A DNA stretch of 64,000 nt from Ruditapes philippinarum. Lineage: Eukaryota. Shown here in pieces: positions 19,605 through 44,003 of this stretch (position 1 is the stretch's first letter; each line of letters opens with the position of its first letter). The notes under the pieces are model-generated. The model was not told where the DNA came from, made no database searches, and was given only the letters and a program-made list of their open reading frames with translations. The stretch is taken from assembly GCF_026571515.1 (NCBI RefSeq), contig NW_026863104.1, positions 1 through 64,000 of the forward strand, read 5' to 3'. The position numbers and the translations under genes were made by a program.

Positions 19605-22600
19605 TCAACCAAGACGTCCTGTTTGTGTACAGTATACTCTGAAGTCACATATATACATGCGCGTGTATGACAAGAGAATGCAAACAGCATATCGGAAATA
19701 GGAAGTACATGTTTGTCGTTTCTCCACAACGTCACTCTGTCTTTGTACCTCTACAATGGAATACACAAGTTTATCGTTAACGCAATTTTCTGTCAGTCGC
19801 AAATAAAAATAATTAACAGTCTAGACGTAGGTATGATGTTGTTGAATTTAGGTGCCTTATAAATTTCTAATGATTTTACTTATATATCACATTTAATGGC
19901 TCGAAGAAAATCTATATGATCTTGTGTTTAATGAAATAAGTAAACAATATAGACATAGGTATGATGTTGATAAATTTAGGTGCCTTATCAATTTCTAATG
20001 ATTTTACTTATAAATCACATTTAATGGCTCGAAGAAAATCTATATGATCTTGTGTTTAATGAAATAAGTAAACATTCTAGACATAGGTACATGTATGATG
20101 TTGATGAATTTAGGTGCCTTATCAATTTCTAATGATTTTACTTATAAATCACATTTAACTGCTCGAAGAAAATCTATAATTCGAGGATTCAAAGGTAAAA
20201 GGTAATAACTGCCATTTTCTAGATTTCGAGAAAAACGCAAAAAACATATAATTTAATACAACTTTATTTTCCGTAATATTTTTATAACAATTTTGATTCT
20301 CTCATATTTATTGACTACATTAGATCATATTTTGTTAAGTTTACCTTGCTTGGTGCTGATAAAACACTGTAATTATAGTTTGTTTTAAAGTTCTAAAATC
20401 AAAATAATATCATTTTACAGAAGTAAAAGGTAATAAATGTACTTAGATCCTGTCAAGACAATAAGGTTGGGAGGTAAAAGGTAATAACTGCACTTACGAC
20501 CTTTTACTTCAGAAGGTTTAGCAATAAAAGTTCCAGATAAATTGTTATAAAATGTAATAAGTGCAGTTATAGCCTTGTTCCTCTGAAAAGAATTTAGATG
20601 TTGCAGTTATTGTTACTGTTGCCAATTTATTTATTATGTCCTTACTTTGAAGAACCGTACGTAATGTAATTAACACACATGCACAATAATACTCGTACAC
20701 AAAACTGACAATTTTCATTCATAGAAATATGAAATATGTACCTGCTCAATATTTAGATTCTACAGAAATAAATTGATAACTAAAAAGTTATAAAATAAGT
20801 ACTAAAATCTTTGTTTACAAATTTTCATTTATTTTGAATGTTCTCTGGTATATAATCGAACTGAAGTCAAACAGACCCCAGACATCAGCAATTAAGGATA
20901 TTAGTGACCGATATCATAGTTAAGTAAATAAAGACTACTGTTGCATGTCACAAAATGCGAATGTTTGTCATTAATTATTCCATGACCTTCACTCATCTTC
21001 TTCAATCTCACTAACAGGAGGCATTGAAAGTTTGTCTTTTATAGATTTGATGCATGGCAATGACTCATAATATGATTCGTACTTGTCGGAATTGTCCCAG
21101 AGGCAACAAGTGACATCAAATCAGTCTTTTTGCAGCAGACATTGGAAGCTTCTCTGTATAAGCCTTGCGTGGAGCCTTAAAAGTTTTTTTTGCTTCTGCT
21201 CTTCTTCTGCATTAACCTTAATTCCTTGAACTCACTTACATCAAAACCATAGTTCACAAAGATACTGTATTCTTTGTCTTTACGAACTTGAATCAATTTT
21301 ATATTCAGCCAATTAACTGGTTCTCCATCAACATCGATTTTTATTGAGCCAAAGTTTTGTTCTTTGTACAACTTGTAATTTAGTATGTCAGTGTATTTTA
21401 TTGGAACGACAATATATAGTTGCTTCCGGCGTGCTAATGATATAACTGTTTCCCACTGAGATGGAACATTTACTTTTGTGAGACTTTTTGCATGCTCGAT
21501 AGATGCATGTATGGAATCACATTCCATTTCTGAATGGCCACTTTCTTGGACACAGTGAACTAAGCAACTTGCAACAAACTGATTGCGATTCTGTCCCCCA
21601 CATGTATCACTATAATTATAATGTCACTTCTTCAATACCAGATGTCTTACTTGCAACAGAAGTTACATACAAGTACACACAAGTTCCTACTTCGCACGAC
21701 CCTCGTTTCCCCTGTGTCTCATCCCACAGCTAACAAGTCCCCTTACCATTTCCCAGTTCATAGAATCACAAATTGTAACAACACAGTTTTCTTTTGTAAT
21801 AAAATTCACCATTTAAACTACATGGTGTTGTCAATATAGCCTGGAGATCAAATGCCGACACAGACAACTTTGGATCTTTCTTTGCGCGTTCTTTATAAGC
21901 TGATTTTTCCATCCTAGCATTGTTTTTTTTTTCTTTCTTGGTGTGCCTGATATTTTGCTTTTGTTGCCCTTTTAGAAAAACGTCTTTGTACACTCTTACC
22001 ATTTTGCCACCAACTGTGAAGAAAAACGAATTCGAAATAGTTCTTTGTTTTGTTCTCTGTTTAGATACCTTCTCTGGTTCTTTATTGGCAACATGGAAAC
22101 AAATAAATTGCCTTTGACTTTTGTAATCACCCATTGACCAGTATGTACTGAATATTTTCTGTCTTTCATCTTCGGTTATATTCTTGCTGCATTTAAATCT
22201 ACACTTAGAGCAATCCTTTCTCTTTAGGCTTCTTGCTTTCATTGATTTTCCTGTTTTACTTGTATACTCCTGTCCTTTTGATCGACGATCTTTTCTAATA
22301 TTGGCTTTCCACAAAAGTCTGCTGACTCTTCGTTTACGACTCAAACACTTACGTTTTGGGCTTATATATGATGCATCTTTGTGAGGCGTTACCTTCAGTG
22401 GAGACCCTTTTCGTTTTCGTTGCTTTGATGGCGTTCTTTTATTCTCTGGGGGTTCTGCGGTTTGCTGTGTTTCACAAGCTTGATCAGCAATCTCTTCCCT
22501 GTCATCTGTGGCATTTAAGTTTGTTGCTACAGTATCATAGTGATATTTGTCGTGTATTGCAACACGTGCCACTAAAATTGGTGGCAAATCTTACTCAGTG

Positions 22601-25600
22601 TTGATGTGTGGTTTAATTTCTACAATCGGTTGGGTTGGCCGGCTAGAAAATATCCGAAGTCGTCGTTGAAATAAATTAGCAATGCAGAGCGGAGCAAAGT
22701 CTGCCATGTATGTATTGCATCTACCGTCAAACCTTATTTCTTCTATCAATGCCATAAATTTGTCCAATTCTTCTTCTGGTGTAAGATTATCTTCAAATGT
22801 TACAAATTTTATGTATTCTGCGCATTTTCATGTATGTGTTTGGCAACGTTCTGTCGCAAATCTTGCACAGACACGGGGTTGTCCAAAAATTTAAGGACAG
22901 CTCTAAGCAAAGAATTTCCGTCTGCCAGTATTTTCTTTCGCTTCAACATGTTGCTGGCAAGAATCTTGTCAAGACGCTTAGTATGATAATCATAGATTTG
23001 CTTTTGTCCAATTGCTTCTCTTCTGCTTTTTGTTTTTGCTTTCGCAACTGCTGAGTCTTCATCTGTTGTAGAATAATAGTCGCTATCAGACATTGTGTCT
23101 AGTTGTCTATCATCTACTCTGTAATTTATCTTTTGGCATTTCAACTGTTTGCCTCTTTTTATGTGTTTGCCTCGACGTTTCCAGCCTTTATCTCTGTTTG
23201 GAGTGTTAGTATTTTCAGGGGAGAACATTGGTGCATTATCAAAATCACTTTCAGTTCTTGGATTTCCAGTATAGTTACTGGAAATGTTTTCTTGGTCTTC
23301 AATGTAAATTATGCAATCAATGGTTTTGTCTGAATAGGCTGCATCCTGTTTTCTAATTCTTTGTATTAATTCTAATAAAGGTATATCATCCAGATCATCA
23401 CAGTTTTCTTCTTCTGTGTAGCATGTGTCATTTCTAAGTTCTTCTGACCGTGTGTCTGTGTCATTTACTTTGCTATAGGTGTTTACCAGAGCTTTTACAT
23501 ACGCATTGTCATACTTGATTAATATTTCAATACCGTCATTATCAAACTGATCTGGGATGTAGTGAGGTACAGCTGTTTGCTTTTCTTGAGGAGAAACCAA
23601 TGTTGTTTCCAACACACTTTCATAATTCATCTCATATTGGACTACTGCATCTATGCTATCGTAATCATTTTCCGAATGTGCAAAAACATTATATATTAAC
23701 ATAGATGAATGTATAACATGTAATATAATGTAATTATTAAAACTGTCCATTATATATATAAACATAATTATGTACCGTATAATAATTTTGATTCTATGTC
23801 AGGGCTCCCATTCAAATGTAACAGACAATACATAAGTATTATTTGATAGTAGAATTATATTAAGTGTAAAATTTCATAATGCATTTATCTTAAGTATTTT
23901 AAGTAACAAATACAAAATTGAGATTTGCATAACAGTTAATAAAAACATTTAATGTAATCACAGAGAAGCTATTAAACGAAAGTTTAATATTTGTGATTAA
24001 ATGATTAAAAACAATACACAAATAGATGTAATTTATATTGAAAACAAAAAATACAAATATGAAATAAAATAGAAAGAATTAAATTTCACTTACCATGAAT
24101 TTTTGCTGTAATACTTTCCACTGTAAAATTATTGTACTCTTCTTGTCCAAATGGCCAATACACAAGCAATTAAATGATTAAATGGCAAGGATTTCACACA
24201 GAATCTTTCTTATCTGATTCAGTGTTATAATTAATTTACTGAAAGGGATTCTCTCTGGCTAAGGTGATAAGTAAACAATTAGCGTGAGAAATTTCTTGGG
24301 AAAAGGGATAACAGATAGTGCCTGTGAACTGTATGAATGCAGTATGCCAGAGGAAAAAGGTGATAAAATCAGTTATAACCTTTTTCCAGTACAGATTCTT
24401 CACAACATGTGGAACAACAGGTAATAAGTACACTTAGAACCTTTTACCCCTACATTATTTGTAGAAAGGAGTTATTACAAAACACTTTTTAATGTTTTGC
24501 CCTTATAAGGATTGAATATTTCTATAATATTTTAGTCAGACAAAAAGGACAATGAGTACATTATAAAAAACATAAAAAGTCATTTTCGGCAAAAATGGTA
24601 GTTATTACCTTTAACCTTTGAACCCTCGAATATGATCGTTTAATTCGTTTGATTTAACAATGGGATACATAAATATAACTTTATGTTTAACATTTTGAAA
24701 GTGGTTTTACAACAATTACTTTTCATCCAATATATTTTCGTTCCCCTGCACATTCCTTCAACCTTTTCAGAAACCAGATATTGCGGAACCTCAGTATCTG
24801 TCCTTACCCACTCTTGCTTGTCAGCCTCGTTATCCTTTTTTTGGTGAATGTCAACCTGTAAGATAAAACAAGGTCATTTTTTTCAACTGAGTCATTACAT
24901 TGTAGTTAATACGATTTTGAACATAATTAAGGATACAGATGTTTCGCTTATGAAACCATTATTTACACAGGAATATGTCGGACAATTTTCACAATGTTTT
25001 TGTCGGAACATAAAATCTCGTGGCCAGTTAATATACAGATATATAGTATACCTCTCCATTTGAATACTCGTTAGGGTCAAGACTTGGAGCTTCGGTCTCA
25101 TTCATATGCTGTGCAATACATTCGCTTTGAGTATTACTCTCCCTATCAACAAATCGTGTAACAACTATGCCCTGAAATAATTGTATAAAAAACATTTTGT
25201 CCCAACTTGTATACGACTGTATAATAACAATTAGATACATGATTTAAGTCAAAAAACTGTTTCCCATTATATCCCATGGGCCATTTAATCAACCGTTAGT
25301 AAGTATGTAAAGGATGCTTTATAGAGAAACTCAGGCAAATTAATGACAAAAATATTAAAATGATCTTATGAACTCAAATCATACTAAAATTACATTTTTT
25401 TAAATCCTAGCATGAATTCTATATAGTTTGGTTTTGAAGTGTAAATATACATTTGTATCTATACGAGTATGTTTAACGCAATTAAGAAGCCGACAGAATT
25501 ACAGAATAGTTTAAAATAAGTTTTGTGACTTGAACATACCCTGGAAGATACAATAACATGGATATTCTAAGTCATTCATTTGACATGTGTTTAACGTTTC

Positions 25601-28600
25601 CAAAGTTCACTGTGACAACTATAGTGAAATCTTAACGCTCTTACCTGACCCACGCGTGCAAGGTTAGAAAACAATCATTTTATACTTCATACTGAGACAA
25701 GATCTGTTCCTGTGACTACCTAGTGTATTCATTTTGAGGACATTTACAGAACAATGAAGGAAAAATTCAAAACGAAGAAATATAAATTTTGCCTGTGTCT
25801 CCCTTTATGAACCAGGTTTTCAACGAAAACCGGGTTATTGTAATGCCGAAGTCGGCGGAATTGGGTGGGCGTCAACTTTTGGTTTCCGCTCAATAACTTT
25901 AGTTTGCTTTGGCCTATTGACACCAAACTTGTTGTGTAGGTAGCTTATATCAAGAGGCATCTTGAGATTGCTACCCAGGTGACTGTAATCAAGGTCAAGG
26001 TCACTGTTACTTAAAATAGAAATCTAGTTTCCGTTGAATAACTTGAGCTTGCTTTGGCCTATTGACACCAAACGTGGTGTATGGATAGCTTATATCAAGA
26101 GGCAGCTTTGGATTGCTACCCAGGTGTCTGTGATCAAGGTTAATGTATTCAGTTTTCACGTAATAACTGTGTGTTTGCCTTGACCTTTTGACAAAAAAAA
26201 TTGCTGTGTGGCAGCTTTGGATTGCCACTTAGATATCTGGGAGCAAGGTCATTTGTTTACAATAGAATTTTCAGTTTCTACACAATAAATTCAGTGCACT
26301 TTGACATATTGATTGCTGTCACATCAAAACTTGGTCGTTGAAAACGTGGTTTTCGTCGCATTGCGGCGCTTCTCGTACCTACTTAGCAACATCTTCTTAA
26401 ATGATCATAAAATACATTTTAATATAAAGTGTTTGAAGAGGGGGTCTTCTATAGATTTACATTCTTGTTTATGTGCAGGTCATCCACATGGTCAACTTAC
26501 ATGTTCGTAATCATAGATGACATCTGCCATATTAGAAATCCGCACGTCAACCTCTGTTTTTGTTACATTAATCTCCTCCTCAAATACGTCCCCTTCGTCA
26601 GATTTGAATGTTTGATGCACAACCTATGTAACATTAAATAAAATGTGCATTCTAAATGAAAGAATATATAACAAGCGATCCTATAATTCAACGGAATCAC
26701 TGAAAAAAACAACATTTTTATATATAATTTGATCATAAAGCTCAGGATACGATCAGGCAGTCAAATGGTGAATATATTTCTTTAGGTACCACTGGTTGGT
26801 ATATCAAGAGGAGGCATTTCAAAACTACATAAAGGAAATTACTGTGGAAAACAAAAGAAAAAAGTAAGTAATCAACTACCCCAACATTTACTAAATTTCA
26901 ATCAAATAAAATAAAACAATATATTTTGTCCAAGGTTTGTACGTTTTACTAATCCTCTTATGTTTCACAAATTTATTTCTGTTATAAACAAAAAACAAAA
27001 CAACATTATAAATAAAAGCAAATTAAACAAAAATAAACAAACAAAAAAAAACAAAGAAACAAATAAAAAAACGAAAAAAAAAGGTAAAAAGGGTAGTATA
27101 GCAAATATAATTAAAGGTGTTTTAGATATTTTAGTGTCAAAAAATTAAACTGGATTTGTTAAAAATAGATATATTGGAGAAAATACTAGATTATTATATG
27201 ATATAATGAAATATACTGAAGATAATAATATACCTGGTTTAATTATGATGATCGATTTCGAAAAAGCCTTTGATACATTGTCTTTTAAATTTATAGAAAA
27301 ATGTCTTTTACTGTTTAACTTTGGTCCTATGTTAAGGAAATGGATATCATTATTTTTATATAATACTGAAACTTGTTTATTCTAAATGGGTTTTTATCTA
27401 CATTCTTCAAGGTTAAACGAGGCTGTAGGCAAGGTGATCCAATTTCACCGTATATGTTCATTTTATGTGTAGAAATATTAGCTATTAAAATAAAACAATG
27501 TAACGATATTAAAGGTATACAGTCATATAGATCGTGAAGAATACAAAATTACACAATTTGCAGATGATACATCACTATTGTTAGATGGTACTGAAAAATC
27601 ATTAAATAATGCTCTAAAATTGGAATTTATTTTCAGAGATTTCTGGACTAAAAGTAAATTTTGATAAAACCAAAGTCATTTGGATAGGTTCCCTTAAGTG
27701 CAGTACTAGATCAATCAAGACAAAATGGAAACTTACATGGGGTGATACACAGTTTAAACTGCTAGGTTTGATATTTGATGTAGATTTAGACAAAATGATT
27801 GATTTGAATTTTTATGAAAAAAGGTAAGAAATAGTATAAGTCATTGAAAAAAAAGAATGTTGACACCAATAGGTAAAGTCACTGTTGTTAAGTCTATTTT
27901 ACTTCCATTATTTACACATTGTTTAACAAGTTTACCAACTCCTAGTGGAGTATTTTTAAAGACCCTCAATGATATATTGTATGACTTTATATGGGGAGGC
28001 AAGGCAAAAATAAAGCAATCAGTATGACAAAGACATACAAAGAATGTGGTCTTAACGTGGTTGATATTTATAGTTATATACACTGTTTAAAGATAAAATG
28101 GCTTAAAAGGTATGTTAATAATAGTGAAGGAAAATGCTTTAACCTTATAAAATCACTGTTTAATATTGATAAAATTTTTGATACTGGAAAATTGTTCTGT
28201 GATTTGATTATTAATAAGATTAAGATTCTTAAGATTAAGATTAAGATTAAGCCTATATTGTACTTATTGATAAGCTTAATATAGATGATATCGAACAAGT
28301 GCTACATATGCCACTATTTTATAACCATAAATTGTTAACAGGAAGTAATATTTTTTATTATATCTTTATATGATCTTGGATAAGATTTGTAAAGGATATT
28401 TTAAATCAACATGGAGAACTTTTAGACTTAAGTTACAAAGAACAAATTACATGTAAACCAATTAATTTTATACAGTATCATAGTTTGAAATTGGCAATAA
28501 AATGATACACACAAAACCTTAATATTTGTATTCAAAATGACTTACTGTATGTTCAGTATCCTATTATAAGTTGTTACATCAAACCTATTATAGTTGTCAA

Positions 28601-31213
28601 TAGCAACCATAAATATGTTTATGAAACCATGGTAACAACTATAGAGGTACCAAAATGCCAAGAAAAATGGATATCTACCTTTGGAGACATTTCCCTAAAT
28701 TGGCAGTTTATATATGGTAATGTATTTAAATGTACTAAAGATTCATACTTACAATGGTTTCAGACAAGAATTATTCACGGAATATTGGCAACAAACTCTC
28801 TTTTATTTCAAATGAAAATAGTTAATACTAAAATGTTCACTTTTTTGTGAATGTCAAGAAGAAACACTGATACATTTATTTTGGGAATGCAAAAAGATTC
28901 AGCCAATATTTCAGTTTCTGAAAGATATAATATAATAACATAATATTCATACCTTTTTTAATTGTAAATCTTTTATTCTTGGCTGTGAATTAAATGACTA
29001 TAGATATGATATTTTATTTTTAGAATTAAAAAGATATATATATTTATTATATACTTATAAATGAAATATTGAGAAATATTGATGAAATAAAATGCGTATT
29101 TTCATTTTCCGTATTTTCACTGTAAAAATTTATTTTTCACTGCAGTGAAACATATTTTCCGTATTTTCACTGGTGTCTTGTCGGACTACTTTCTTTTAAA
29201 TTCTACCAGTACACAAAATTTAAGGGAAAGTTTTTCAAATTTTATCACAAAAAAGAGAAAAAAGTACACAATAAACAGAAAATTCAAGTTTTTTCTATAA
29301 ATACATGATTTATTTTCATCTTGTGGCATGAAAATTACCATATTTCACTCGTGGCTACCGCCACTCATGAAATATTTATTTTCATACCACTCGATGAAAA
29401 TATATCATGTATTTATAGAAAAAACTTGAATATCCTCTATTTATTTAATTTTACCCATGAAATATGGTGCTACATCAGTGAAATATATTTCATATTTTTA
29501 AAAAAAATAAATATGAAATATGAATATGGAAATTGGCGGAGTCAAAACTCATATTTTTTAAGGGACTTCTTCCGCCATTTTGTTTTAAAATTTGAAAAAT
29601 ACAAAACAACTTTTTGTTGAATTTTGCTTTGAAAACTATCTAGAATGATAGAAAATGGTCTAACTAAGAAAATAAATCCGAACACCAATATCTTTAATTC
29701 AATTATTAACGCTGTACAGAAGTTTAAACAATTGTTTACGTGACGTCACAATGAAGCGCCAAATAATGCGTGCAAAACCAGACGCAATAATATATTACTG
29801 CGCGCTGTACAATTGCAGTTGCGTAGCAAGCAATAGGGTTCGTAACCATTTTTCTTTAATAATGAAATTAAATAAAAAAGTTATTTTTTTCTTTTTCGTG
29901 AAATATGGTATATATTTTCACTCAACATGATAAAATGCCACATATTTTTACTCGCCGTCCCGGCTCGTGAAAATATGTGGCATTTTATCATGTTTCGTGA
30001 AGTATATTCCATATTTCACTCAAACGAAAAAATATCCTCTCAATATTTGTCTGAGCGAAAATAATTGTTACCTACTTGTACTGGTTTTAAAAATAGCTTG
30101 AAGTTAGCTTGGAATTGTTATAAAATATAAATTTGACAACAGAAGAAATCAATAGATGGGCAATTGTTAAATCTTTTAATTCGTAACTGAAATAACTACA
30201 TCAAAATTTGGTTATTCCACTTATATAAAAGATAACAACTTCTATGCATCCTATATATTTCTCACACAATCGAACAAAGAAAATCCAATAGAATTTGCAA
30301 ATAAATCTTATTAAAAAAAACCAATAAGGACCTACCTTGTATGCTTCTGTTGTAATTTTTGGTCCAAAATGGACAGACACAAGGACAATAGCTGCAACAG
30401 CTGTCAAGGCAACAACACCAGCTTCCACTCCAACTATAATTATTTTGTTCGAACATCCCTTAGATACTTCATTGTGAACCTTGAAATATTTTCATAAAAA
30501 ATAATTTAAAATAAATTATACATTTATTTATAAATTAAATATAGTTGTATCCTAATAATACGATCAAAGGTTATGTGTTAAAATGCAAGGTAGCGGACGC
30601 ACAAACATTTCTGTTAAAAAGTGCCATCTGGTTTTTAAATAAATAACCGCAGTATTAGTATTAGTTTAAAATTGTTTAATGCCTGAACTTCATATCAAGG
30701 CATAAGTTAATTTGACATTAAAGTCTGAAGTCAAAGGTTGTGACCAAATATAAAGGATTATAACCTCTTGATTTGGTTTTTATTTTTACATTAAATTACC
30801 CAATCTTTAATAACTTTACACTTGTGTCACAATATTATTTTACGACAGCTTTTCCTTTTGAAGTAATATAAGTTTAACTTCAGTTTAAGAATCATAATCA
30901 ATGTTAACAAATCAGCACTTGAAATTTAAATTCAATTTAGAGTACATTTGTTATGTAGACAAAAGGTTAATGACGTTTTCACATCAGCACCTTACACAAC
31001 TTTACATAAACTTACTAAAATATTGCAGTTTTAATATAATAAAGGCAAAATCAAAATCATTTATAATGCATCCAAAATATTTAAGAACTAAGTATGGCTA
31101 GTGGTTACGAATATAAGTCTTCAGCATTTAATGATACTCAAAAGATAGGAATGTATGCTCATAAATGAACTAGATATCATTTGAAGTATTTTTCTGAAGA
31201 CGAATCTTACCAT
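19605..31213 (-). CDS. BRICHOS-domain type II membrane proprotein, paralog A (236 aa; 253 aa if the ATG at 31264 is used), with a C-terminal 4-Cys beta-hairpin-like peptide
   Basis: GT-AG exons 31213-31211 (ATG), 30479-30336, 26623-26501, 25171-25052, 24855-24720 and 19789-19605 join without stops: M|[48 protein letters not shown]|[41 protein letters not shown]|[40 protein letters not shown]|[45 protein letters not shown]|[68 protein letters not shown] hallmarks: VIYDY Asp, first Cys (SECI), second Cys followed by xxxxIYW. Confidence 0.85.
19821..20180. repeat. 128-bp tandem repeat (~2.8 units) in the last intron of BRICHOS-A
   Basis: Units start at 19821, 19949 and 20077. The paralogous intron (~38198-38300) has one unit. 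Confidence 0.85.
20181..24629 (-). mobile_element. Sola1-like DNA transposon, decayed, encoding an OTU-like domain and a transposase
   Basis: ~38-bp TIRs tcgaggattcaaaggtaaaaggtaataactgccatttt / aaaatggtagttattacctttaacctttgaaccctcga. Inserted in ATAT (right copy exact, left ATAAT); the empty site is at ~38292. Transposase motifs CSKCRFKC, FDLQAILTTP..FYYKRKLCCYNL and GHSEMECDSIHASIE in ORFs 21766-22587 and 21177-21527. Confidence 0.8.
25806..26377 (+). mobile_element. Helentron/HINE-type non-autonomous element with ~150-bp internal repeats, intronic
   Basis: 5' 'accaggttttcaacgaaaaccgggt' palindrome. Repeated 'aataactt..gctttggcctattgacaccaaac' units. 3' 'gaaaacgtggtttt' inverse plus the hairpin 'cgtcgcattgcggcg'. 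Confidence 0.7.
27125..29045 (+). mobile_element. Decayed 5'-truncated L1/Tx1-clade LINE (ORF2 RT), antisense within intron 2 of BRICHOS-A
   Basis: Translated fragments GFVKNRYIGENTRLLYDIM, IDFEKAFD, RGCRQGDPISPYMFILCVEIL, ITQFADDT and WFQTRIIHGILATN, with many stops and frameshifts. Absent from the paralogous intron (~40125). Confidence 0.85.
29066..30041. mobile_element. Two adjacent hairpin-bearing non-autonomous elements (Crypton-like, tentative)
   Basis: Both end in 'aatatcctct' (about 29438 and 30040). The second is the reverse complement of 17980-18337 and 36590-37140. Confidence 0.55.
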
Positions 31214-31290
31214 CTTAGCTCTTCCAACTTTGCAATCTGGGTAGTTCTTGTGATTTCTATCCATATCTAAAATTAAAAAAGTAAATTACA

Positions 31291-33301: not shown

Positions 33302-33363
33302 CTGTATTGCTAAGCTATTTCAATAACAATTCCCAACCTTCAAATTCTACATATGATCAAACT
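33302..33363 (-). other. Probable 5' UTR exon of BRICHOS-A; a further donor lies at 33581
   Basis: Minus-strand attttag|...cag|gtgagt, conserved in copy B (~46645-46706). Stops occur in all frames. Confidence 0.5.
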
Positions 33364-34447
33364 CTAAAATAGGGAGTAATAAAGAATCCCTAAAGAACGC
33401 ACAAGACGACACAATATGTTGCAGGCTAAAACAATGTAAGAGTGTTATACCTGGCCATTTAAAACATACAGCAATTGTTATTTGTATTTATGAGAATAAA
33501 TAACAATGCATGGGAATTCTAACCACCAGTAATAGTTGATGAATAGTTACAGTGCAAGCCATGGATGCTGTGTTAACTTACCTGTGATGTCTTGCAAGTA
33601 GGATATAGCCCAGTATAGCCCTCTGTCATTCCCGGAATTCATCTATATCTATGAGCAGTAGCAGCTGTGGGCTAACTTCAAACATTAATTTCAATTACAT
33701 TGTTTCCAATACAGAATTATATGAATTAGAAATAAAATATTTCAAATAAAACATTTCAAAACCTCAACATGAAAAATGTGTTCAGATTGAAATCATGAAT
33801 AATATTGAAATAGTTAAATTACCATGTAACATATGCACATACAACACGTACAGAAATGCTGATGGATAATTGATTTACAATAACACAAGATCACTGCGGT
33901 ATACCGTGCCCCGGATAATGCTCGATATTATGAGGACTTTCATCCAATTTCGCGACTTTGAACAGGGAACGAAGGTTAGTTCAGCGACGATATTTTCCAA
34001 ACTAATGGCTATTTCATTTATCTCAACGGGTTTTATATATCTAGAGGTATTTTTGTAGCTCTAAAAGACGTAGAAGTATAACAGGTATTTGTAAAATTGA
34101 TTAAACTACCACTAAACGATCCACTGCTCACTAGAAAATACTGACGAGAGTTGGTAAGCGAACAGCATGGATCCTGATCAGACTGCGCGGATGCGATGGC
34201 TGGTCTGGATCCATGCTGGTCGCGAACGCACTTTGTTGGTTTTGTCATGACGCGGCTCATATTTCCAATCACCTCGTGTCAGAAAACCTCAGTGGAGTCC
34301 CTTAAAATTTAACATATCACTGTTTTAATTTTTATTTAATAGTAAATCAATTAAACTGAATAAGACTGTTTGTGTTCATGCAACAATTAAGAAAATGTGA
34401 TAATTAAAGTTTTGATACTAGCTAGTCTCGGTCTTTATTTTATATAG

Positions 34448-35837
34448 GTTTTTACCAAAAGAAGACACGGCTGCATGTAAGAAATTGCAAAGGAAATTAT
34501 CACAAGTATGCCATAAACACCAGCAAGCACTTGAATCCTTACAGAAAGCTATTACGGTAAGTTTTAGTTTTAATATTTGTAACACAAAAAAATGCTGACT
34601 ATTCTTATAACTTGTATAGCTAAAATCTACTTTATAAACTGTTATAAAGTTAAGCTGTATCAACTTAAATGATGCCACGTTAATCATTGGTTGTTTTTTT
34701 TTATTTCATTCAAAGAGTTTACAACTTCTTGTATATATCATTTCTGTCAAATTACTTCCGGAAGTTTCAAGAGCTCTTCATAAAGATATTGATCTACACA
34801 AATCAATTCATCAAACCATTTTCTAATATTATCAAACTTATAATACCCACCATTATGAGCATTTCAACATTAAAGTGATGGATTTGTCAGTCCAAAACAT
34901 TGGACTGACTGTAACACATTCTAAAGATGGAACATCTTTTTCATAAAAGTATATATATATAAAAACAATATATAACAAGTTTATTGAATTTGACTTTTAT
35001 TTATAAAAAAACTCTTAAATGATAAGGAATACAAAGAACTGGACAGGAAATGTTTGGATGCATACAATTGATACATTGTATGATGGGACTTGATTAATCT
35101 TCTATTTGATGTAAGTCTAGACCTATACCTTGAGAACAAAATTTCAATTACTTTGAGCACTCCTTTTTTACCAGAATGATAATTCTAATTATGAAAAATG
35201 ACCATAAACTGAAAAGCGTTGCAACGCTTTTACTCAAATTGGACTAAGAATGGCACACAATACGTTTTCAATTTCTTTCTGGCAATAGTTCTTACTTACC
35301 TTAAAAAATATGCCCTTTATATTTTCAGTATTTAGATGAGAGGAGCTCTATGTATGGGCGAATTCCACTTTAGATGTTAAAGGGAAAGATTGTATGCTCA
35401 AATTAAAACGAGGTGAGACAATTTCATGGTATATGCGGGTAATCATACTCAATATGCGTCACTTTTTTCATCTTTATAAAAGCACAATTTATAAAGAAAT
35501 ATGGATTCCCTTAATATTGTAATTGCTGTTCAGAATTAGAATTCAGAAAATGAGCCGTATTGTTAAATACTGTGTAAGATATTTACAAATTGTAGTTTTT
35601 ATTTTAAAAATCGTTTTATGTTATTAACATGAAAGATATATTGTATTATAGATATAAATTGTAATCTATTGTTAAAATATTTTTTCTTCTTCTTAAGATA
35701 TTAACATTAAACAGAAGTTTTGTTCTGCTGATGGCAGCCGTGCATTTGGTTGGACAAGAAAGTTTGGATGCGGGAACAAGCATTATGGATTCTATTCAAC
35801 GAATGAAAAAAGACTTGTCCGATTAAAATTCAATTAA
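34448..35837 (+). pseudogene. Partial duplicate of the orphan gene (exon 4, start of exon 5, exons 9 and 10)
   Basis: Exons 34448-34556, ~35336-35383 (same TAG, donor mutated) and 35698-35837 ending FYSTNEKRLVRLKFN*. An internal deletion of ~2 kb at ~35066 removes exons 5-8. Confidence 0.7.
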
Positions 35838-37963
35838 TCTTTTATTTATAAAAATCTGCAAATATTAAATAAATATTTATTTTGAATCACATTCAGGGTT
35901 ATTTTCTTTTTATTTCTCTCGGCGTATCTATATAATTATATTAACACAATTTTGGTCAAACTATTTAAATTTGCTTAAATTGTCTTAGCTTTGTTATTTA
36001 TTTATCGATTGGAAGAATTTTGACTAAAAAATCGGGATGTGAAATAACTCAAATATGACCTTGACATTTAATTGATATTGAATGTCAATGTCAAATCATC
36101 TAAATTTGCTCGTCATAACTTTATTATTTATTTACCGATTGGATTTAGTTTTGGACAAAATAACACTTATGACAAAACCGATATGTTAATTTTTTCTAAT
36201 ATAGCATTGGCCTTATGTTACTCGGGATGTTAAATAACTCTAATATGACCTTGACCTTTAATTGACCTTGAATGTCAAGGTCAAATCATTTAAATTTGCT
36301 TAGATTGTTATAACTTTGTTATTTATTTACAGATTTGATTTTTACTTCAACAAAAGAACACATATGGCAAACCAAGATGTTGATTTAATTCAAATATGGC
36401 ATTGGCCTTAAAGGGTATAAATCTATGTCTTATGAAATATTTCTATAAAATTTATCAACAGTAAAATAATATTGGTTCCTTTATTATATGGTGGATTCCC
36501 GAAAAAGTTGTAACATAGAATGTCTCTTTTATTTAACACTCATGAATATTGTACGTAAACAGAATGAAATGTTCCAGAATTAAATATTAAGTGGATATTT
36601 TTTCGTTTGAGTGAAATATGGGGTATATTTTCACTCAACATGATAAAATGCCACATATTTTCACGAGCCGGGACGGGAGAATATTTCAAGAAAAACGAAA
36701 AAATAACCTTTTTATTTAATTTCATTATCAAAGAAAAATGGTTACGAACCACCTTGCTTGCTGCAATTGTACAGCGCGCAGTGATATATAATTTATAGAT
36801 GCGTCTTGTTTTGCACGCGATATTTGGCGCTACATTGTGACGTCACGTAACAACTCTTTAAACGTCTGTACAACGTTAGTGACCGAATTAAAGATATTGG
36901 TGTTCGGATTTATTTTCTTAGTTAGACCATTTTCTATCATTCTAGATAGTTTTCAAAACAAAATTCAACAAAAGTTGTTTTGTATTTATCAGATTTTTCA
37001 AACAAAATGGCGAAAGAAGACCCTTAAAATAAATATGAGTTTTGACTCCGCCCACTTTCATATTTATATTTCATATTTATTTTTAAAAAATATGAAATAT
37101 ATTTGACAGATATAGCACCATATTTCATGGGTAAAATCAAAAAAATATTCCATATTGAATTATTAGGGAATGTGATAGAATATTTTTACATTTTAACCTA
37201 ACAATTCATACAATCTCATACTAAAATATCGCTTAAGAAATACACAAAAAGACTGGTAGTGAAATGAAATGTAAAATGAAAACAAATAAGTTAAACGAAT
37301 CTTTAGCTAAGAGCACGTTTAGACTCAAATCAAGGTCAAAGTATAAAATACAGACGCAGATCGTTGAAATAATCTTTATTCTAATTATTTATTGGATATA
37401 CCACGTTGAAAAAGAAAGGAAGTTAGTTTTACATATCAAAGCAATAAGAAACAGAATAAATCGGATATACATTTACATGAAAATATGAAAAAAACTTTTA
37501 CCATATGTAACTTTGCAAAACATTAAAATGTCTTCCATACATAAAACGGTCAAATCGTATATCAAGCTAGAGATTATTAAAGTTAAAAAAGAAAAAAACT
37601 GCAAACAGACATCCGTGACACCTAAAAGTACGTAATCTATATGATCATAAGGTAAGAAATTTAAAAAAAAAATATTGTCAAAACATATTAACCCTCAAAA
37701 TGCTAAATAATGCAACATTGTGATTTTACAAATGGAAACATGTGTTTTACCTGAAAATATGTAAATTCTAGGAAAAGAAATCATCATTGAAACATACTTG
37801 AATAATAATCATACTCATATAATTCCTAATATGTTTAAATAAACACCTTTTTATATTTAACATACCGTTGTAATTTTCAAAGAGTATGTTACATGGTGTT
37901 TAGGAGTCAATCAAGTAAATACGTTATGTTGAATTGCAAATCACAAGAGTTGTTATTGAAATA

Positions 37964-40900
37964 TTATGTAATATTTTCAACCAAGACGTGTCCTGTACAG
38001 TATACTCTGACGTAACATATATACATGCGCGTGTTTGACAAGTGAATGCAAACAGCATATCGGTAAGAGATAGTACATATAATTAGTGTGCGTCGTTTCT
38101 CCACAACGTCACTCTGTCTTTGTACCTCTACAATGGAATACCCAAGTTTATCGTTAACACAATGTTCTGTCAGTGGCAAAATGAAATAAGAAACAATCTA
38201 GACAAAGGTATGATGTTGATAAATTTAGGTGCCTTAACAATTTCTAATGATTTTACTTATACGATCACATTTAACTGCTCGAAGAAAATCTATATGATCG
38301 TTTAATTCGTTTGATTTAACAATGGGATACATAAATATAACTTTATGTAACATTTTGAAAGTGGTTTTACAACAATTACTTTTCATCCAATATATTTTCG
38401 ATTCCTTGCACATTCCTTCAACCTTTTCAGAAATCAGATATTGCGGAACCTCAATATCTGTCCTTACCCACTCTTTCTTGTCAGTCTCGTTATCCTTTTT
38501 TTGGTGAATGTCAACCTGTGAGATGAAACAAGGTCATTTATTTTCAATTTTATGAGTCATTACATTGTAGTTAAACGATTTTGAATATAATTAAGGATAC
38601 AGATATTTCGCTTATGCAATTATTTATACAGGGATATGTCGGACAATTTTTACAATGTTTTTGTCGGAACATAAAATCTCCTGGCCAGTTAATATACAGA
38701 TATATAGTATACCTCTCCATTTGAATACTCGTTAGGGTCAAGACTTGGAGCTTCTGTCTCATTCATATGCTGTGCAATACATTCGCTTTGAGTATTACTC
38801 TCCCTATCAACAAATCGTGTAACAACTATGCCCTGAAATAATTGCATAAAAAAGCATTTTGTCCCAACTTGTATACGACGGTATAGATTCTAATAACAAT
38901 TATATACATGATGGAAGTCAGATAACTGTTTCCCATTATATCCCATGGACCATTTAATCAACCGTAAGTAATTAAGTAAGTAAGTAAGTAAGTAAAGGAT
39001 GATTTATACCTACTCAGCAATATCTGCTTAAATGATCATAAAATACATTTTTATATAACGTGTTTGAAGAAGGAAGTCTTCTTGTTTATGTGCAGTTCAT
39101 CCACATGGTCAACTTACATGTTCGTAATCATAGATGACCTCTGCCATATTAGAAATCCGCACGTCAACCTCTGTTTTGGTTACATTAGTCTCCTCCTCAA
39201 ATATGTCCCCTTCGTCAGATTTGAATGTTTGATGCACAACCTATGTAATATTAAATAAAACATGCATTCAAAATGACAGAATTATATATGACAAGCGACC
39301 CTATAATTCAACAGAGTCATGAAAAAAAAACATTTTTATATATAATTTGATCATAATGCTCAGGCCCCGTGTTCACAAAGAAAAGATCAGGATCAGGATC
39401 AGATGATCCTGATTTTATTTTCATTGTTTTATACAACTAAAATTGATGGTATTATGCTAGAAGTAAATGGTACATATTCGGAATATAAATAATTGCTTAC
39501 TTGCAAAGAAACCAACCTATTTTGGGGAAAAATCAACAAATAACAAAACAAATACAAAAATAATCGGATCAAAATAAGGATCAAGATCAGGATCAAGATC
39601 AAAATTTGGATCAACTGTAAAATGCCCATATCTTGTAAAAATAAGAATAAATTCATTCTAAAATTTCATAAGCATGCTATCTCAAGTCCAGTTTTATTAA
39701 GTTAATACTGAATATTTCATCTATGAGGATAAATAATAGAGAATATTTGAGTTTTTAAATTTGATCCTAATCTTGATCCTGATCCTTAAATCTTTGTGAA
39801 CACGGGGCCAGGATATGATCAGGCAGTCAATTGGTGAATATATTTCTTTAGGGACCACTGGTTGGTGTATCAAGAAGTACATAAAGGACATTACTGTGGA
39901 AAACAACAATGAAGTAAGTAAGTAATAAACTACTATAACATTTACTAAATTTCATTGAAATAAAATAGAACAACATATTTCGTCCAAGGTTTTTTTATGT
40001 TTTACTAATCCTCTTATGTTTCACTTTATTTCTGTTATAAACAATAAAAAACAAAACAACAAAACAAATAAAAGCAAAAACAACAAAAAACAAACAAACA
40101 ATTAAAAAAAACGAAAAAAACACACACAATCGAACAAGAAGAAAATCCAATGAAATTTGCAAATAAAAACCCAATAAGGCCTACCTTGTATGCTTCTGTT
40201 GTAATTTTTGGTCCAAAATGGACAGACATAAGAACAATAGCTGCAACAGCTGTCACAGCAACAACACCAGCTTCCATTCCAACAATTATTCTTTTATTCG
40301 AACGTTCCTTAGATTCTTTAATGTAAACCTTCGAATATGTCATAAAAATTATTTTATATAAATTATAATTATTTATTTATTTATATATTAAATGTAGTTG
40401 TTCCCTAATAATAGGATCAATGGTTTTGTGTTAAAATGCAAGGTAGAGGACGCACAAACATTTCTGTCTAAAAAAAACTAGTGATGTTATATGAAATACA
40501 TACATTATATGAAATATTTTTTCGTCATTAAATTTTACTTATCATACAAAAATTTTAGAAAATTCTATGAAGGAAATGTTTCGATATTTTTTTAATAATT
40601 TACAGGATTCATGTTTATATTGCTCATTTTTTGTTCAGTTAAAAAGCTTGAAAAACTCATATTTTTAAGAAATATATTCAAATTATCATTTGTTTCATAC
40701 AGAATCAAAAAAACAAGTTATCTTTGTATGAATTTGTGCTTGTTTTGTGTATTTAACTGTCTTTTACATTTTTTATATTTTAATACACAGTGTGACTATT
40801 TTGACAGTTCTGATATATACGGTTACCATGGAAACTGCCATTTCACAAAAAATCCAAATTGTCAACATTTTTTTTTTATTCGCCATTAAATTTTACTTAT

Positions 40901-43900
40901 TATACAAAAATTTTTAAAAAATCTATGAAAGGATTAAAGTTTCCTTAAACTGTAGAAAATGTCTTTAAGCTTAACGAATATTTCATAGCAAGTTTTATAA
41001 ATTGTACACACTCTTTATGCTCTATTTCTGTGGGTATAAAAAATCAGTGCAAGATCAGGAAGTAAGGAAGTAAAGAGTTGCTTTATTTGATTTATTTCTG
41101 CCGTTAAAGAAATGTCATCAATGCAAACATTTAAATCATCAGTTACCTTTTAAGTCATCAGTATATTTGGAGTATTTTTCAACTTGGATATTAAGTGATT
41201 TATTGGAGCTTGGATTATTTTTTAAAATAGTTTAAATTATTCTTGTGGATTTTATTGTGGGAATTTATTCTAAAGTGTTCTTGGATTTTACTTGGATTTA
41301 AGTGTGCTATTCAAAAAGGATCATTCCAGGATCAGACTAGACATTTGAAATTTACATTTTTATTTGGATTTCAGGTATTTGTACACATAATTTGTTGTTT
41401 TAATTTTCTTTGATAATTTTTCTGTAATAAATTTGTTATTGTTACAAGTTTGTTGCTGGCTTTTCTTTCTCGTTACGCCTGGCTCGTAACAATATATACG
41501 GTTACCATGGAAACTGCCATTTCACAAAAAATCCAAATTGTCAACATTTTTTTTATTCGCCATTAAATTTTACTTATCATACAAAAAATTTAAAAAAATC
41601 TATGAAAGAATTAAAGTTTCCTTAAATTGTAGAAAATGTCTTTAAGCTTAACGAATATTTCATAGCAAGTTTTATAAATTGTACACACTCTTTATGCTCT
41701 ATTTCTGTGGGTATAAAAAATCAGTGCAAGATCAGATAGTAAGGAAGTAAAGAGTTGCTTTATTTGATTTTTTTTCTGCCGTTAAAGAAATTTCATCAAT
41801 ACAAACATACGTAACTGCGATTAATATATTCTTCCATTCTTACCCAATACGTGTGTTTATTTATTTAATATTTGCAAATGTTTTGATATATAGATTAAGT
41901 GTTCCTAAAACAAAACAATCAAGGCAATATTTATCTGTTTCTTAATAGCAATCAGCAGTTGGACTGATTACTGTAATAATGAAGTAATTTCAAACAAAAT
42001 AATTACTATCAATAAAGCGTTTTAAGACATGTTTTGTCTGTGCCAAATTCTTTTTTACTGGCAATGTCATGAAAAAAGATATATTTGACAAGATCATAAA
42101 AAGTAACTTAAATGCTTTTTCTGGCACATGAACTGTGATAATATCAGTCTTTCCAGGTTCCATTCCTAAAGCTTGCTTCATTATAAAACGTTCAGAAGAC
42201 AATACCTAAGAGTGCTGTGATTTTTTTGCTATGCATATTGAAGGCTGCTGGCGTATCACAAGCTTAAATAGCTGCCCAAAGTAATAAACTCCTAATTATT
42301 TTTTTTATATATCCCACGTAGTAGTTATCCTTATTATAGAACAAATTAAAATGGCACCAAGACGCTTCCGTAAGTATGTCATTCTATAACATCTTTTTCT
42401 GAAAAAGGTATAGGTGAAATTATGCCCATCCAAGGGTATATAGAGAGTGAACAGGTGAAAGCCAAAGAATTTTACATTTTACCATAATTCCTTTCAATTT
42501 TATAATATTCATACCATGAACGATGAAGAACGCATATGGCATAAGGGAATTCTATAAATATTTACATGTAACACTCAATTTATAATAAGAGTGGTGCAGT
42601 CTTGTCATATTTTGGGGAGATTTACATTCTATTCTAAACATTTGCGGTCAATCCCTATTGAAACAGTCATTTTTTTTAAATACATAATCAATTCAGCTTA
42701 AATTCACAAGGAAAACATCTCATTAATATGTCTTCTATTTGAGTTAAACTAATCTTGACATACATAATTTATTTCCTATCACAGAAGCACTTTTTACTTT
42801 ATTTTTCCAGCACAAGAAATAAAGATTTAAATTCGAATACTTAATATGGTTTAAAATCAATCAATTTGTAAATGCCTTAACTTCATACCAAGGCATCAGT
42901 TAATTTGACATTAAAGTCTGAAGTCAAAGGTTGTGAACAAATGTAAAGCATTATGGCATCTTGATTTGGTCTTTTTTGTACATTGAATTACCCAATCCTT
43001 AATAACTTTGTGATTAATGCTTCCGAGGGATCACTTTGTTTCCAGATTTTTATACTTCACAACAGCAGGTGTCAAGTGCTGTGTGGCAGCTGTAAAAGGT
43101 TGCCGCGTACTTCACTTCAGTGTTGTTATATTTTTCTGGTCCTTCGGGATCATTGATGCCAGCACTATTAAATGTTGAGAATTGAGTACCGCTCAAGCCG
43201 GTGCTAGGGGGCGTGAGGGATGTTGCAATTATTCATTATCCCTCATGTACAGACTCAATCAAACCGAGTCTGCAATTCTTATGTAATTTTGTTGTGAGTA
43301 ATGCTTCCGAGGGATCACTTTGTTTCATGATTTTATACGTCACATCAGCAGGTGTCAAGTGATGTGTGGCAGCTGTAAAAGGTTGCCCCGTACTTCACTT
43401 CAGTGTTGTTATATTTTTCTGGTCCTTCGGGATCATTGATGCCAGCACTATCAAATGTTGAGAATTGAGTACCGCTCAAGCCGGTGCTGCTAGGGGGCGT
43501 GAGGGATGTTGCACTTATTCATTATCCCTCATGTACAGACTCAATCAAACCGAGTCTGCAATTCTTATTATATGTAATTTTGTTGTGATTAATGCTTCCG
43601 AGGGATCACTTTGTTTCCAGATTTTTACACTTGTGTCAAACTATTTTTTAAGACAGCTTTTCCTTTTGTAGTTTTATAAGTTTAACTTCAGTTTAAGAAT
43701 CATAAACTAATCAATGATAACAAATCAGCACTTGAAATTTAAATTCAAATCAGATTAAAAGTGTTATGTAGACAAAAGGTTTATGACTTTTTCAGATCAG
43801 CACCTTACAAAACTTTACATAAACTTACTAAAATATTGCAGTTTTAATACAATTAAAGAAATGCGTCTTAAAAATTTTGTATTCAAGTATGGATAGTGGT

Positions 43901-44003
43901 TACAAAAAATAAACTTTCAGCATTTAAAGATACTCAAAAAATAGAAATGTATGCTCATACTAGACATCATTTGAAGTATTTTTCTGAAGAAAAATATTAC
44001 CAT
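37964..44003 (-). CDS. BRICHOS-domain type II membrane proprotein, paralog B (242 aa), with a divergent C-terminal 4-Cys peptide
   Basis: Exons 44003-44001 (ATG), 40328-40185, 39240-39118, 38832-38713, 38515-38380 and 38166-37964 have the same phases as paralog A, the same lengths except the last exon, and no stops. C-terminus ...[47 protein letters not shown]. Confidence 0.85.
39364..39808. mobile_element. PIF/Harbinger-type MITE, intronic, copy B only
   Basis: TIR gccccgtgttcacaaag / ctttgtgaacacggggc with a 3-bp TSD CAG. Empty site 'gctcaggatacg' at ~26740. Internal (gatcar)n repeats. Confidence 0.85.
40815..41808. repeat. ~315-bp direct repeats flanking an LTR-3'-end-like fragment
   Basis: 'atatatacggttaccatggaaactgcc...' at ~40814 and ~41492. 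The spacer has AATAAA and ends '...cctggctcgtaaca'. Confidence 0.6.
43010..43628. repeat. Inserted head-to-tail array (~2.15 x ~285-290 bp) of a sequence partly shared with the Kolobok MITE interior
   Basis: 'taatgcttccgagggatcactttgtttc' at ~43016, 43299 and 43590. It shares 'catgtacagactcaatcaaaccgagtctgcaatt' with 12846-12879. Absent at ~30817 in copy A. Confidence 0.75.

What the first reader, a model, noticed from the sequence alone, without database searches (positions are those of the whole stretch)
19605..44003. Tandem pair of intact BRICHOS proprotein genes releasing 4-Cys beta-hairpin-like peptides: candidate new antimicrobial/defence peptide family
Seen: two six-exon genes on the minus strand, invisible as single ORFs, splice with canonical GT-AG and matching phases into stop-free proteins of 236 and 242 aa. 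The order is short tail, TM helix, linker, BRICHOS (VIYDY, two Cys, CxxxxIYW), spacer, KR, then a Cys-bridged peptide. Established: signal/TM + BRICHOS + C-terminal beta-hairpin is the precursor design of the polychaete peptides arenicin, alvinellacin and capitellacin, and BRICHOS chaperones beta-prone client segments in proSP-C and Bri2. Inference: the host looks like a bivalve, and I do not recognise these peptides or their C-X8-C-X10-C-X5-C spacing, so this may be an undescribed mollusc BRICHOS-peptide family. Both ORFs stayed intact while the neighbouring duplicated gene decayed, which suggests selection.
Basis: partly seen in the sequence, partly recalled or inferred. Interest (0 to 1): 0.93.

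Follow-up and report, generated by a model that had tools for sequence, protein, structure and literature searches.

The report
Truncated clam BRICHOS peptide-precursor gene pair
Two neighbouring Manila clam genes really do encode membrane-anchored BRICHOS precursor proteins with a cysteine-bridged tail behind a Lys-Arg cleavage site, but they are weakly expressed, shortened copies of a clam family whose normal tail is a 58-62-residue, eight-cysteine, positively charged peptide of untested function.

Summary
The two six-exon minus-strand genes are real. They are NCBI's uncharacterized LOC132721150 and LOC132721145 of Ruditapes philippinarum.

**What was confirmed**
- RNA contigs confirm four of gene 2's five splice joints.
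- The public 240-aa protein that matches gene 1's exons passes Pfam BRICHOS (33.6 bits, cutoff 25).
- The best structural match in the PDB is the proSP-C BRICHOS domain (Z 5.3).

- The last acceptor lies 39 nt further 3'.
- Gene 1 starts 17 codons earlier.
- The E5-E6 joint of the window genes was not seen in reads.

**Main new result: the 4-Cys tails are truncations**
- Two other clam loci and three Mercenaria genes carry a KR site followed by a 58-62-aa, 8-Cys, cationic tail.
- The window lineage changed Cys3 to Arg.
- It also gained an in-frame TGA where a paralogue has CGA. The Cys6-8 coding relic still follows gene 1's stop.
- It swapped its first exon.

**Expression and selection**
- Abundant RNA comes from the full-length paralogue, not from these genes.
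- dN/dS between the pair is 0.74, not distinguishable from neutral. Even so, exons 2-5 carry no indels.

Antimicrobial function is untested. The architecture is closest to chondromodulin/tenomodulin and to annelid BRICHOS-AMP precursors. An earlier scan note (s1-803746) flagged an 8-Cys form elsewhere in this genome. I rate the interest as moderate.

The parts
31211..31264 (-). Gene 1 (LOC132721150) exon 1, coding part: 18 codons (MDRNHKNY...RAKM) ending in ATG|GTAAG.
   Evidence: tblastn of P0001 residues 1-19 at 100% identity; DNA read; coordinates
30336..30479 (-). Gene 1 exon 2: end of the cytosolic tail plus the TM signal-anchor (48 codons)
   Evidence: P0001 residues 19-67, 100%
26501..26623 (-). 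Gene 1 exon 3: linker and start of BRICHOS (NVT sequon, VIYDY)
25052..25171 (-). Gene 1 exon 4: BRICHOS, first conserved Cys, NET sequon
24720..24855 (-). Gene 1 exon 5: BRICHOS end (second conserved Cys, KIYW), ends in phase 1
19605..19750 (-). Gene 1 exon 6 as in P0001: spacer [11 protein letters not shown], 36-aa 4-Cys tail, then stop TGA at 19607-19605.
19527..19604 (-). Relic of the ancestral tail end behind gene 1's stop. It is still in frame for 25 codons, with three Cys (Cys6-8) and the ancestral stop.
   Evidence: translate; tblastn of P0002 residues 192-266 runs through the stop; DNA alignment shows TGA where gene 4 has CGA
44001..44059 (-). Gene 2 (LOC132721145) exon 1, 3' part, ending ATG|GTAAT (ATG 44003-44001). 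The RNA contig runs on beyond 44059, and a further in-frame ATG lies at 44099.
   Evidence: joint 40328/44001 in an X1 contig; DNA; ORF
40185..40328 (-). Gene 2 exon 2: TM signal-anchor. The in-exon ATG at 40343 lies upstream of the acceptor actually used.
   Evidence: joints
39118..39240 (-). Gene 2 exon 3
   Evidence: joints 40185/39240 and 39118/38832
38713..38832 (-). Gene 2 exon 4
   Evidence: joints (15 raw reads in X24 for E3-E4)
38380..38515 (-). Gene 2 exon 5. A contig breaks exactly at donor 38380. NCBI's model P0003 instead reads on to 38237.
37964..38127 (-). Gene 2 exon 6, placed by homology with gene 1 and gene 3: spacer, KRR, 4-Cys tail, then stop TAA at 37966-37964. It had no RNA coverage in the four runs laid.
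42116..42181 (-). Relic of the family's ancestral first coding exon ([12 protein letters not shown]...PEK) inside gene 2's intron 1. Its donor has changed from GT to GC. Gene 1 has no such relic.
   Evidence: tblastn of P0002 and P0004 N-termini; DNA compared with genes 3 and 4
20178..24630 (.). Insertion that swells gene 1's intron 5 and has no counterpart in gene 2. It carries two long minus-strand ORFs (21766-22587 and 22809-23765).
   Evidence: no Pfam hit at 1e-3
13699..47244 (.). Tandem segmental duplication that made the gene pair: copy A about 13699-33891, copy B about 34299-47244, at 83-93% identity
   Evidence: self-BLAST

Best explanation
**What is there (shown).** These are two transcribed, tandemly duplicated members of a BRICHOS proprotein family found so far only in venerid clams. 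There are four loci in this Ruditapes philippinarum assembly and at least three genes in Mercenaria mercenaria.

**The family's standard design (shown).**
- a short cytosolic tail
- a TM signal-anchor
- an acidic, N-glycosylatable luminal region holding the BRICHOS domain
- an invariant Lys-Arg
- a 58-62-aa cationic, Tyr/Arg-rich tail with eight conserved Cys, encoded in the last exon

**How the window pair differs (shown).** It descends from one copy that did three things before duplicating:
- It changed Cys3 to Arg.
- It gained an in-frame TGA (CGA in a paralogue) that removes the last 26 residues with Cys6-8, leaving four Cys.
- It replaced the ancestral first exon by a new upstream one.

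**How it probably works (inferred).** The protein enters the ER as a type II membrane protein. BRICHOS keeps the beta-prone tail from aggregating. A dibasic-specific proprotein convertase cuts after KR and releases the tail, as happens for chondromodulin-1, Bri2 and annelid BRICHOS-AMP precursors.

**What the released tail does is unknown.** A secreted defence peptide is the leading guess for the full-length paralogues. The window copies are low-expressed, relaxed derivatives. Their BRICHOS part still seems constrained, and their shortened hairpin tail may or may not retain a function.
For: - **Identity and family.** A profile of exon 6 hit one protein among 1.84 billion: P0001, LOC132721150. 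The exons match it at 100%. Relatives are P0002-P0007, and paralogue loci lie on C8643 and C3940.
- **BRICHOS.** Pfam gives E=4.7e-8 and 33.6 bits against a cutoff of 25. All 7 family members match. Asp and two Cys are invariant. 2yad_A ranks first of 48,161 chains, Z 5.3.
- **Truncation.** The alignment of tails, the in-frame relic behind the stop, TGA versus CGA with the TGA letters shared by gene 2, and the exon 1' relic with its GT to GC donor.
- **Splicing.** Four joints were seen. The E5-E6 joint type is seen in the transcript-derived P0002, a 1011-nt contig against a 2.8-kb gene.
- **Expression.** The deep contigs carry gene 3's letters at 9 of 10 variant sites, while gene 2-like contigs have depth 3-5.
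- **Selection.** dN/dS is 0.74 for gene 1 vs gene 2 and 0.34 for gene 3 vs gene 4. Exons 2-5 have 0 indels where 10-15 are expected.
- **Charge.** Tails carry +2 to +12 and the proregions -7 to -14.
- **Tail structure.** Beta strands are predicted in the tail at pLDDT 60-75.
- **Parallels.** Chm1/Tnmd architecture (PMC5390337) and the chaperone role of BRICHOS (PMC9714404 abstract; PMC5431198).
Against: - The E5-E6 joint of the window genes was not seen in reads, and gene 2's last exon had no coverage.
- NCBI's gene 2 model lacks the tail exon.
- KR has no Arg at P4, so it is not a classical furin site, and cleavage is unproven.
- The AF2 models are poor overall (mean pLDDT 45-46).
- dN/dS near 1 fits decay as well as it fits diversification.
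- No tissue or challenge data were available, because run identities are coded.
Confidence: 0.62

Rival explanations
1. One reading: the pair encodes a new family of antimicrobial or defence peptides. The 4-Cys, two-disulfide beta-hairpin tails are the selected, functional products, released after KR.
For: - The tails are cationic (+3) with predicted beta-hairpins.
- The proregion is acidic and the tail varies fastest, as in many AMP precursor families.
- Losing Cys3 together with Cys6-8 leaves an even number of Cys, which would be expected if free thiols were selected against.
- There are no indels in exons 2-5.
- BRICHOS-AMPs exist in annelids.
Against: - The 4-Cys form arose through a nonsense mutation in an 8-Cys domain.
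- RNA levels are very low compared with the full-length paralogue.
- dN/dS is neutral-like.
- One public model omits the tail exon.
- At +3 and strongly hydrophobic (GRAVY 0.2-0.6), the tails are only weakly AMP-like.
- No activity data exist.
Confidence: 0.17
2. The pair is on its way to becoming pseudogenes: leftover duplicates of a functional 8-Cys gene that are transcribed at noise level and whose open frames persist only because they are young.
For: - They have a premature stop, a lost Cys and a lost original first exon.
- dN/dS is 0.74 in the proregion and 1.3 in the tail.
- Contig depth is 3-5, against thousands for the paralogue.
- Gene 2 has lost the tail relic and has an indel near its stop.
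- Gene 1 is swollen by insertions.
Against: - There are no indels in 523 nt of exons 2-5, where non-coding DNA of the same duplication predicts 10-15 (P about 3e-5 to 2e-7).
- All splice sites are intact and four joints are used correctly.
- A new first exon with its own ATG is in use in both copies.
Confidence: 0.2
3. The family is the clam counterpart of chondromodulin-1/tenomodulin. Its Cys-rich tail would then be a matrix-bound or signalling domain, not an antimicrobial one.
For: - The nearest protein-language-model clusters are LECT1/chondromodulin and tenomodulin, 0.92 each with about 205 of 256 shared features.
- The architecture is the same: type II TM, BRICHOS, basic cleavage site, and eight Cys in the last exon (PMC5390337).
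- From memory only, the spacing C-x6-C-x3-C...C-x3-C and a Tyr/Gly-rich loop are similar.
Against: - No sequence-level match to any non-clam protein was found.
- The clam tails lack the hydrophobic C-terminal Trp...Val tail described for Chm1/Tnmd.
- The tails are hypervariable and multi-copy, whereas vertebrate Chm1/Tnmd tails are described as well conserved.
- Atlas scores of 0.9 are leads only.
Confidence: 0.25

Closest known systems
Chondromodulin-1 (CNMD/LECT1) and tenomodulin (TNMD)
   Same: Both are type II membrane precursors with a BRICHOS domain, a basic processing site (in Chm1) and a C-terminal domain with eight Cys encoded by the last exon. They are also the nearest clusters by language-model features.
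   Different: - No detectable sequence similarity.
- KR rather than RERR.
- No hydrophobic Trp...Val end.
- The clam tails are hypervariable, multi-copy and strongly cationic.
- The window copies keep only four Cys.
Annelid BRICHOS-AMP precursors (arenicins, alvinellacin, capitellacin, nicomicins, HfBRI-25)
   Same: Both combine an N-terminal hydrophobic segment, an acidic BRICHOS proregion and a C-terminal cationic, disulfide-bridged, beta-structured peptide. Both families grow by tandem gene duplication.
   Different: - Annelid peptides have about 20-25 residues and 1-2 disulfides. The clam family's normal tail has 58-62 residues and 8 Cys.
- The window tails (36 and 42 aa, 4 Cys) reach a hairpin-like size only by truncation.
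- There is no sequence similarity, and no activity has been shown.
- In Alvinella the peptide is conserved and BRICHOS diversifies. Here the tail diverges fastest.
Bri2/ITM2B
   Same: A type II membrane BRICHOS protein whose short C-terminal peptide is cut off by a proprotein convertase at a ...KR site. This comparison rests on established knowledge and was not tested here.
   Different: The linker and tail differ. No similarity was found by any search here, and Bri2 did not appear among the nearest Atlas clusters.

Membership tests
BRICHOS domain family (Pfam PF04089) | Match to the family HMM above the curated gathering score | tested here: met
   P0001 (identical to gene 1's exons) scores E=4.7e-8 and 33.6 bits against a cutoff of 25, covering profile positions 3-91 of 91. 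All 7 family proteins match. Single exons alone give nothing.
BRICHOS domain family (Pfam PF04089) | Conserved Asp and a pair of conserved Cys | tested here: met
   D104 (in IYDY), C125 and C183 are invariant in the 7-protein alignment. The features are as described in PMC9627735 (title) and PMC5390337. Their equivalence to the canonical positions was inferred from the full-length HMM match, not read from a residue-by-residue alignment.
BRICHOS domain family (Pfam PF04089) | BRICHOS fold | tested here: met
   In an unbiased search of 48,161 PDB chains the top hit is 2yad_A, the proSP-C BRICHOS domain (Z 5.3, rmsd 3.4, 59 residues aligned, model residues 100-195), 1.4 Z above the next row. Foldseek gave only E=1.9 for 2yad_D. 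The models are of low confidence, so this support is modest.
Annelid-type BRICHOS-AMP precursors | Short (about 20-25 aa) C-terminal beta-hairpin peptide with 1-2 disulfides | tested here: not met
   Full-length family members have tails of 58-62 aa with 8 Cys and three predicted strands. The window tails have 36 and 42 aa with 4 Cys, and only because of a premature stop.
Annelid-type BRICHOS-AMP precursors | Sequence relatedness of the peptide or precursor to known members | tested here: not met
   The exon 6 profile searched against 1.84 billion proteins returned only P0001. Family profiles found only clam proteins.
Annelid-type BRICHOS-AMP precursors | Demonstrated antimicrobial activity of the released peptide | not testable with these tools
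   This needs synthesis, oxidative folding and MIC assays.
Chondromodulin-1 / tenomodulin | Type II TM, BRICHOS and a C-terminal domain with eight Cys in the last exon | tested here: inconclusive
   Met by paralogues P0002 and gene 4 and by the Mercenaria proteins. Not met by the two window genes, which have four Cys.
Chondromodulin-1 / tenomodulin | Homology of the Cys-rich domain, including the hydrophobic C-terminal tail | tested here: inconclusive
   The only support is a language-model score of 0.92. No CNMD or TNMD sequence could be fetched for an alignment. The clam tails end in ...NPIC plus a few basic residues, with no hydrophobic Trp...Val end.

The most novel reading that the evidence does not exclude
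Venerid clams have a BRICHOS-chaperoned family of secreted, cationic, Cys-rich defence peptides, which would be the first such precursors outside annelids. The window pair would then be a naturally minimised two-disulfide hairpin version, kept by selection, in which loss of Cys3 compensated for the loss of Cys6-8.
Probability: 0.18. Interest if true: 0.75.

Novelty: new variant of a known kind. Interest (0 to 1): 0.45.

Why it matters
If the full-length 8-Cys tails prove to be defence peptides, BRICHOS-linked antimicrobial precursors would no longer be an annelid speciality. A commercially important clam would also gain a new immune gene family. The window pair would then be a natural experiment showing which part of the tail (the first hairpin with two disulfides) can stand alone.

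If instead the family is a chondromodulin/tenomodulin relative, it would give an invertebrate handle on that poorly understood branch of BRICHOS proteins.

As it stands, the window genes are annotated but uncharacterised, weakly expressed and truncated. The more interesting objects are their full-length paralogues on other contigs.

Tried and rejected

- The spliced proteins were never joined or sent to any tool. Exons were searched one by one by reference, and full-length work used database proteins (P0001-P0007).

**Searches that led nowhere**
- Exon-by-exon Pfam: no hits.
- Sequence search of the PDB with the family profile: only a chance hit.
- Foldseek against the PDB with the P0001 model: nothing significant.
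- ESM Atlas with the 8-Cys tail alone: no usable hit.
- Word-indexed searches for distant relatives: only clam proteins and three short JGI fragments.
- Papers naming the LOC identifiers: none. One broad paper search was uninformative.
- Pfam on the two long ORFs in gene 1's intron 5: nothing at 1e-3.

**Readings rejected**
- A start at the in-exon ATG 40343 of gene 2 is rejected, because the acceptor actually used lies downstream of it.
- The deep RNA coverage on exons 3-5 is not expression of the window genes, because it carries gene 3's letters.
Full report
**1. The observation**

The window is AT-rich animal DNA (GC about 0.3).

BLAST of the two halves of the interval against each other shows blocks of 83-93% identity that include introns. 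A self-comparison of the whole window shows one tandem segmental duplication, about 13.7-33.9 kb and 34.3-47.2 kb.

Reading the minus strand gives two six-exon genes with GT-AG borders and matching phases. Exons were handled one at a time by reference, and phases and lengths were checked arithmetically.

| Exon | Gene 2 | Gene 1 |
|---|---|---|
| E1 | ...44001 (ATG\|GT) | 31264-31211 |
| E2 | 40328-40185 | 30479-30336 |
| E3 | 39240-39118 | 26623-26501 |
| E4 | 38832-38713 | 25171-25052 |
| E5 | 38515-38380 | 24855-24720 |
| E6 | 38127 (reader: 38166)-37967 | 19750 (reader: 19789)-19608 |

**2. RNA evidence**

- It shows CT..AC joints exactly at E1-E2 (44001/40328), E2-E3, E3-E4 (also 15 raw reads) and E4-E5.
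- The 200-nt bin holding the 5' part of exon 6 had essentially no depth, so the E5-E6 joint of gene 2 is not shown.
- Very deep contigs (word depth in the thousands) on E3-E5 carry fixed differences from the window. Nine of ten of these are the letters of a paralogue on contig C8643. The abundant mRNA is therefore that paralogue's.
- Contigs that truly match gene 2 have depth 3-5.

**3. Identity**

- Single exons gave no Pfam hit.
- A profile of the two exon 6 translations (A1), searched against 1.84 billion representative proteins, found one protein, P0001.
- P0001 is NCBI's 'uncharacterized protein LOC132721150 [Ruditapes philippinarum]' and matches gene 1's exons at 100%.
- P0001 has 240 aa.
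- The same joint type is present in P0002. That protein was predicted from a 1011-nt Logan contig, while the matching gene on C8643 spans 2.8 kb with introns. It is therefore transcript evidence for this acceptor in the family.
- NCBI's model of gene 2 (P0003, 223 aa) reads through the E5 donor and lacks the tail.

**4. BRICHOS membership**

- P0001 matches PF04089 at E=4.7e-8 and 33.6 bits (cutoff 25), over the whole profile.
- All seven family proteins match.
- Asp in IYDY and two Cys are invariant, as are two N-glycosylation sequons.
- The AF2 models are poor (pLDDT 45-46), and Foldseek found nothing significant.
- A search of 48,161 PDB chains that does not depend on Foldseek ranks the proSP-C BRICHOS domain first (2yad_A, Z 5.3), 1.4 Z above the next row.

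**5. The family, and what the window copies are**

Six-frame searches of the clam's own assembly (1.41 Gb) find four loci: the two here, plus one each on C8643 and C3940. Mercenaria mercenaria has three neighbouring LOC genes.

In all the full-length members, an invariant KR is followed by a 58-62-aa tail with eight aligned Cys, spaced C-x8-C-x6-C-x3-C-x5-C-x14-C-x3-C-x8-C. The tail carries net +2 to +12, and the luminal proregion carries -7 to -14.

The window genes differ from this design in three ways.

- **Cys3 is Arg in both genes.**
- **A premature stop.** Gene 1 has an in-frame TGA where gene 4 has CGA. Behind it the reading frame continues for 25 codons with Cys6-8 and the ancestral stop. 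Gene 2 carries the same TGA letters, but an indel shifts its frame so that it ends five codons later, and the relic is deleted. The truncation therefore predates the duplication.
- **A new first exon.** The family's usual first coding exon survives as a relic in gene 2's intron 1 (42181-42116) with its donor GT changed to GC. It is absent from gene 1. Both genes use a new upstream exon instead.

**6. Selection**

Values are Nei-Gojobori counts summed over exons 2-5.

| Pair | Differences (nonsyn / syn) | dN/dS, exons 2-5 | p vs neutral | dN/dS, tail |
|---|---|---|---|---|
| Gene 1 vs gene 2 | 20 / 7 | 0.74 | 0.32 | 1.3 |
| Gene 3 vs gene 4 | 25 / 19 | 0.34 | 0.0013 | 0.48 |

Exons 2-5 (523 nt) nevertheless have no indel. 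Alignable non-coding DNA of the same duplication has 67 gap openings in 2254 nt, which predicts 10-15 indels (P between 3e-5 and 2e-7). The frames, at least of the BRICHOS part, therefore look protected, although amino-acid constraint is weak.

**7. Mechanism**

- Shown: the gene structure, the BRICHOS domain, the invariant KR, the Cys scaffold, the truncation and the low RNA level.
- Inferred from established BRICHOS biology (PMC9714404, PMC5431198, PMC5390337): type II insertion, chaperoning of the beta-prone tail, cleavage after KR and secretion of the tail.
- The tails are predicted as strands: a hairpin in P0001, and three strands in P0002 at pLDDT 60-75. The truncation keeps the first hairpin.

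**8. Comparison with known systems, and novelty**

- Reviews from 2022 and 2026 list BRICHOS-AMPs only from annelids.
- No paper in the library links BRICHOS peptides to molluscs or names these loci.
- By language-model features the nearest clusters are chondromodulin-1 and tenomodulin (0.92). Their architecture, including eight Cys in the last exon, matches the full-length clam proteins. No alignment could be made, and the hydrophobic C-terminal end is missing.
That fits genes 3 and 4.

**9. Verdict**

This is a real, annotated but uncharacterised gene pair. It is a new variant of the 'BRICHOS precursor with Cys-rich C-terminal cargo' theme, but the window holds the truncated, weakly expressed branch of the family. 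The antimicrobial reading remains a hypothesis. The better test objects are the full-length paralogues.

Noticed in passing
L001 (G000:C8643) 3757-6592 (+) and L002 (G000:C3940) 9624-6709 (-): Two compact (about 2.9 kb) full-length paralogues with 62-aa 8-Cys tails. The C8643 type supplies the very abundant mRNA seen in several runs. They are better candidates for functional work than the window genes.
   Followed up: partly
L002 7169-7219 (-): A duplicated fragment of exon 5 (SEKVERM*RGTKIYWMK) with an in-frame stop lies in the intron between exons 5 and 6 of gene 4. It looks like a pseudo-exon.
   Followed up: no
window 43008-43628: Two tandem copies of a unit of about 285 bp (93.5% identical) in gene 2's intron 1. 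They attract very deep RNA and contig coverage from many places, so this is a dispersed, transcribed repeat rather than part of the gene.
   Followed up: no
window 42123-42173: About 170 raw RNA reads match only these 51 bases and run on into unlike sequence on both sides. The downstream loose end reads as gene 3-type exon 2 (VHTESS.). They are therefore transcripts of the full-length paralogue touching the exon 1' relic.
   Followed up: yes
window 54047-55972 (+): ORFs of a BEL/Pao-type retrotransposon: reverse transcriptase (RVT_1, E=2.8e-8) and Pao peptidase A17 (E=3.3e-48).
   Followed up: partly
window 21766-23765 (-): Two long ORFs (273 and 318 aa) inside the 4.4-kb insertion in gene 1's intron 5. 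Neither has a Pfam hit at 1e-3.
   Followed up: partly
P0007 (Mercenaria LOC123556621 isoform X2) and P0003 (window gene 2 model): Both species have public models that end just after BRICHOS and lack the Cys-rich tail. Tail-less isoforms may be a regular feature of the family.
   Followed up: no
Paralogue gene 4 reads ...GRLVRS... at this point.
   Followed up: yes
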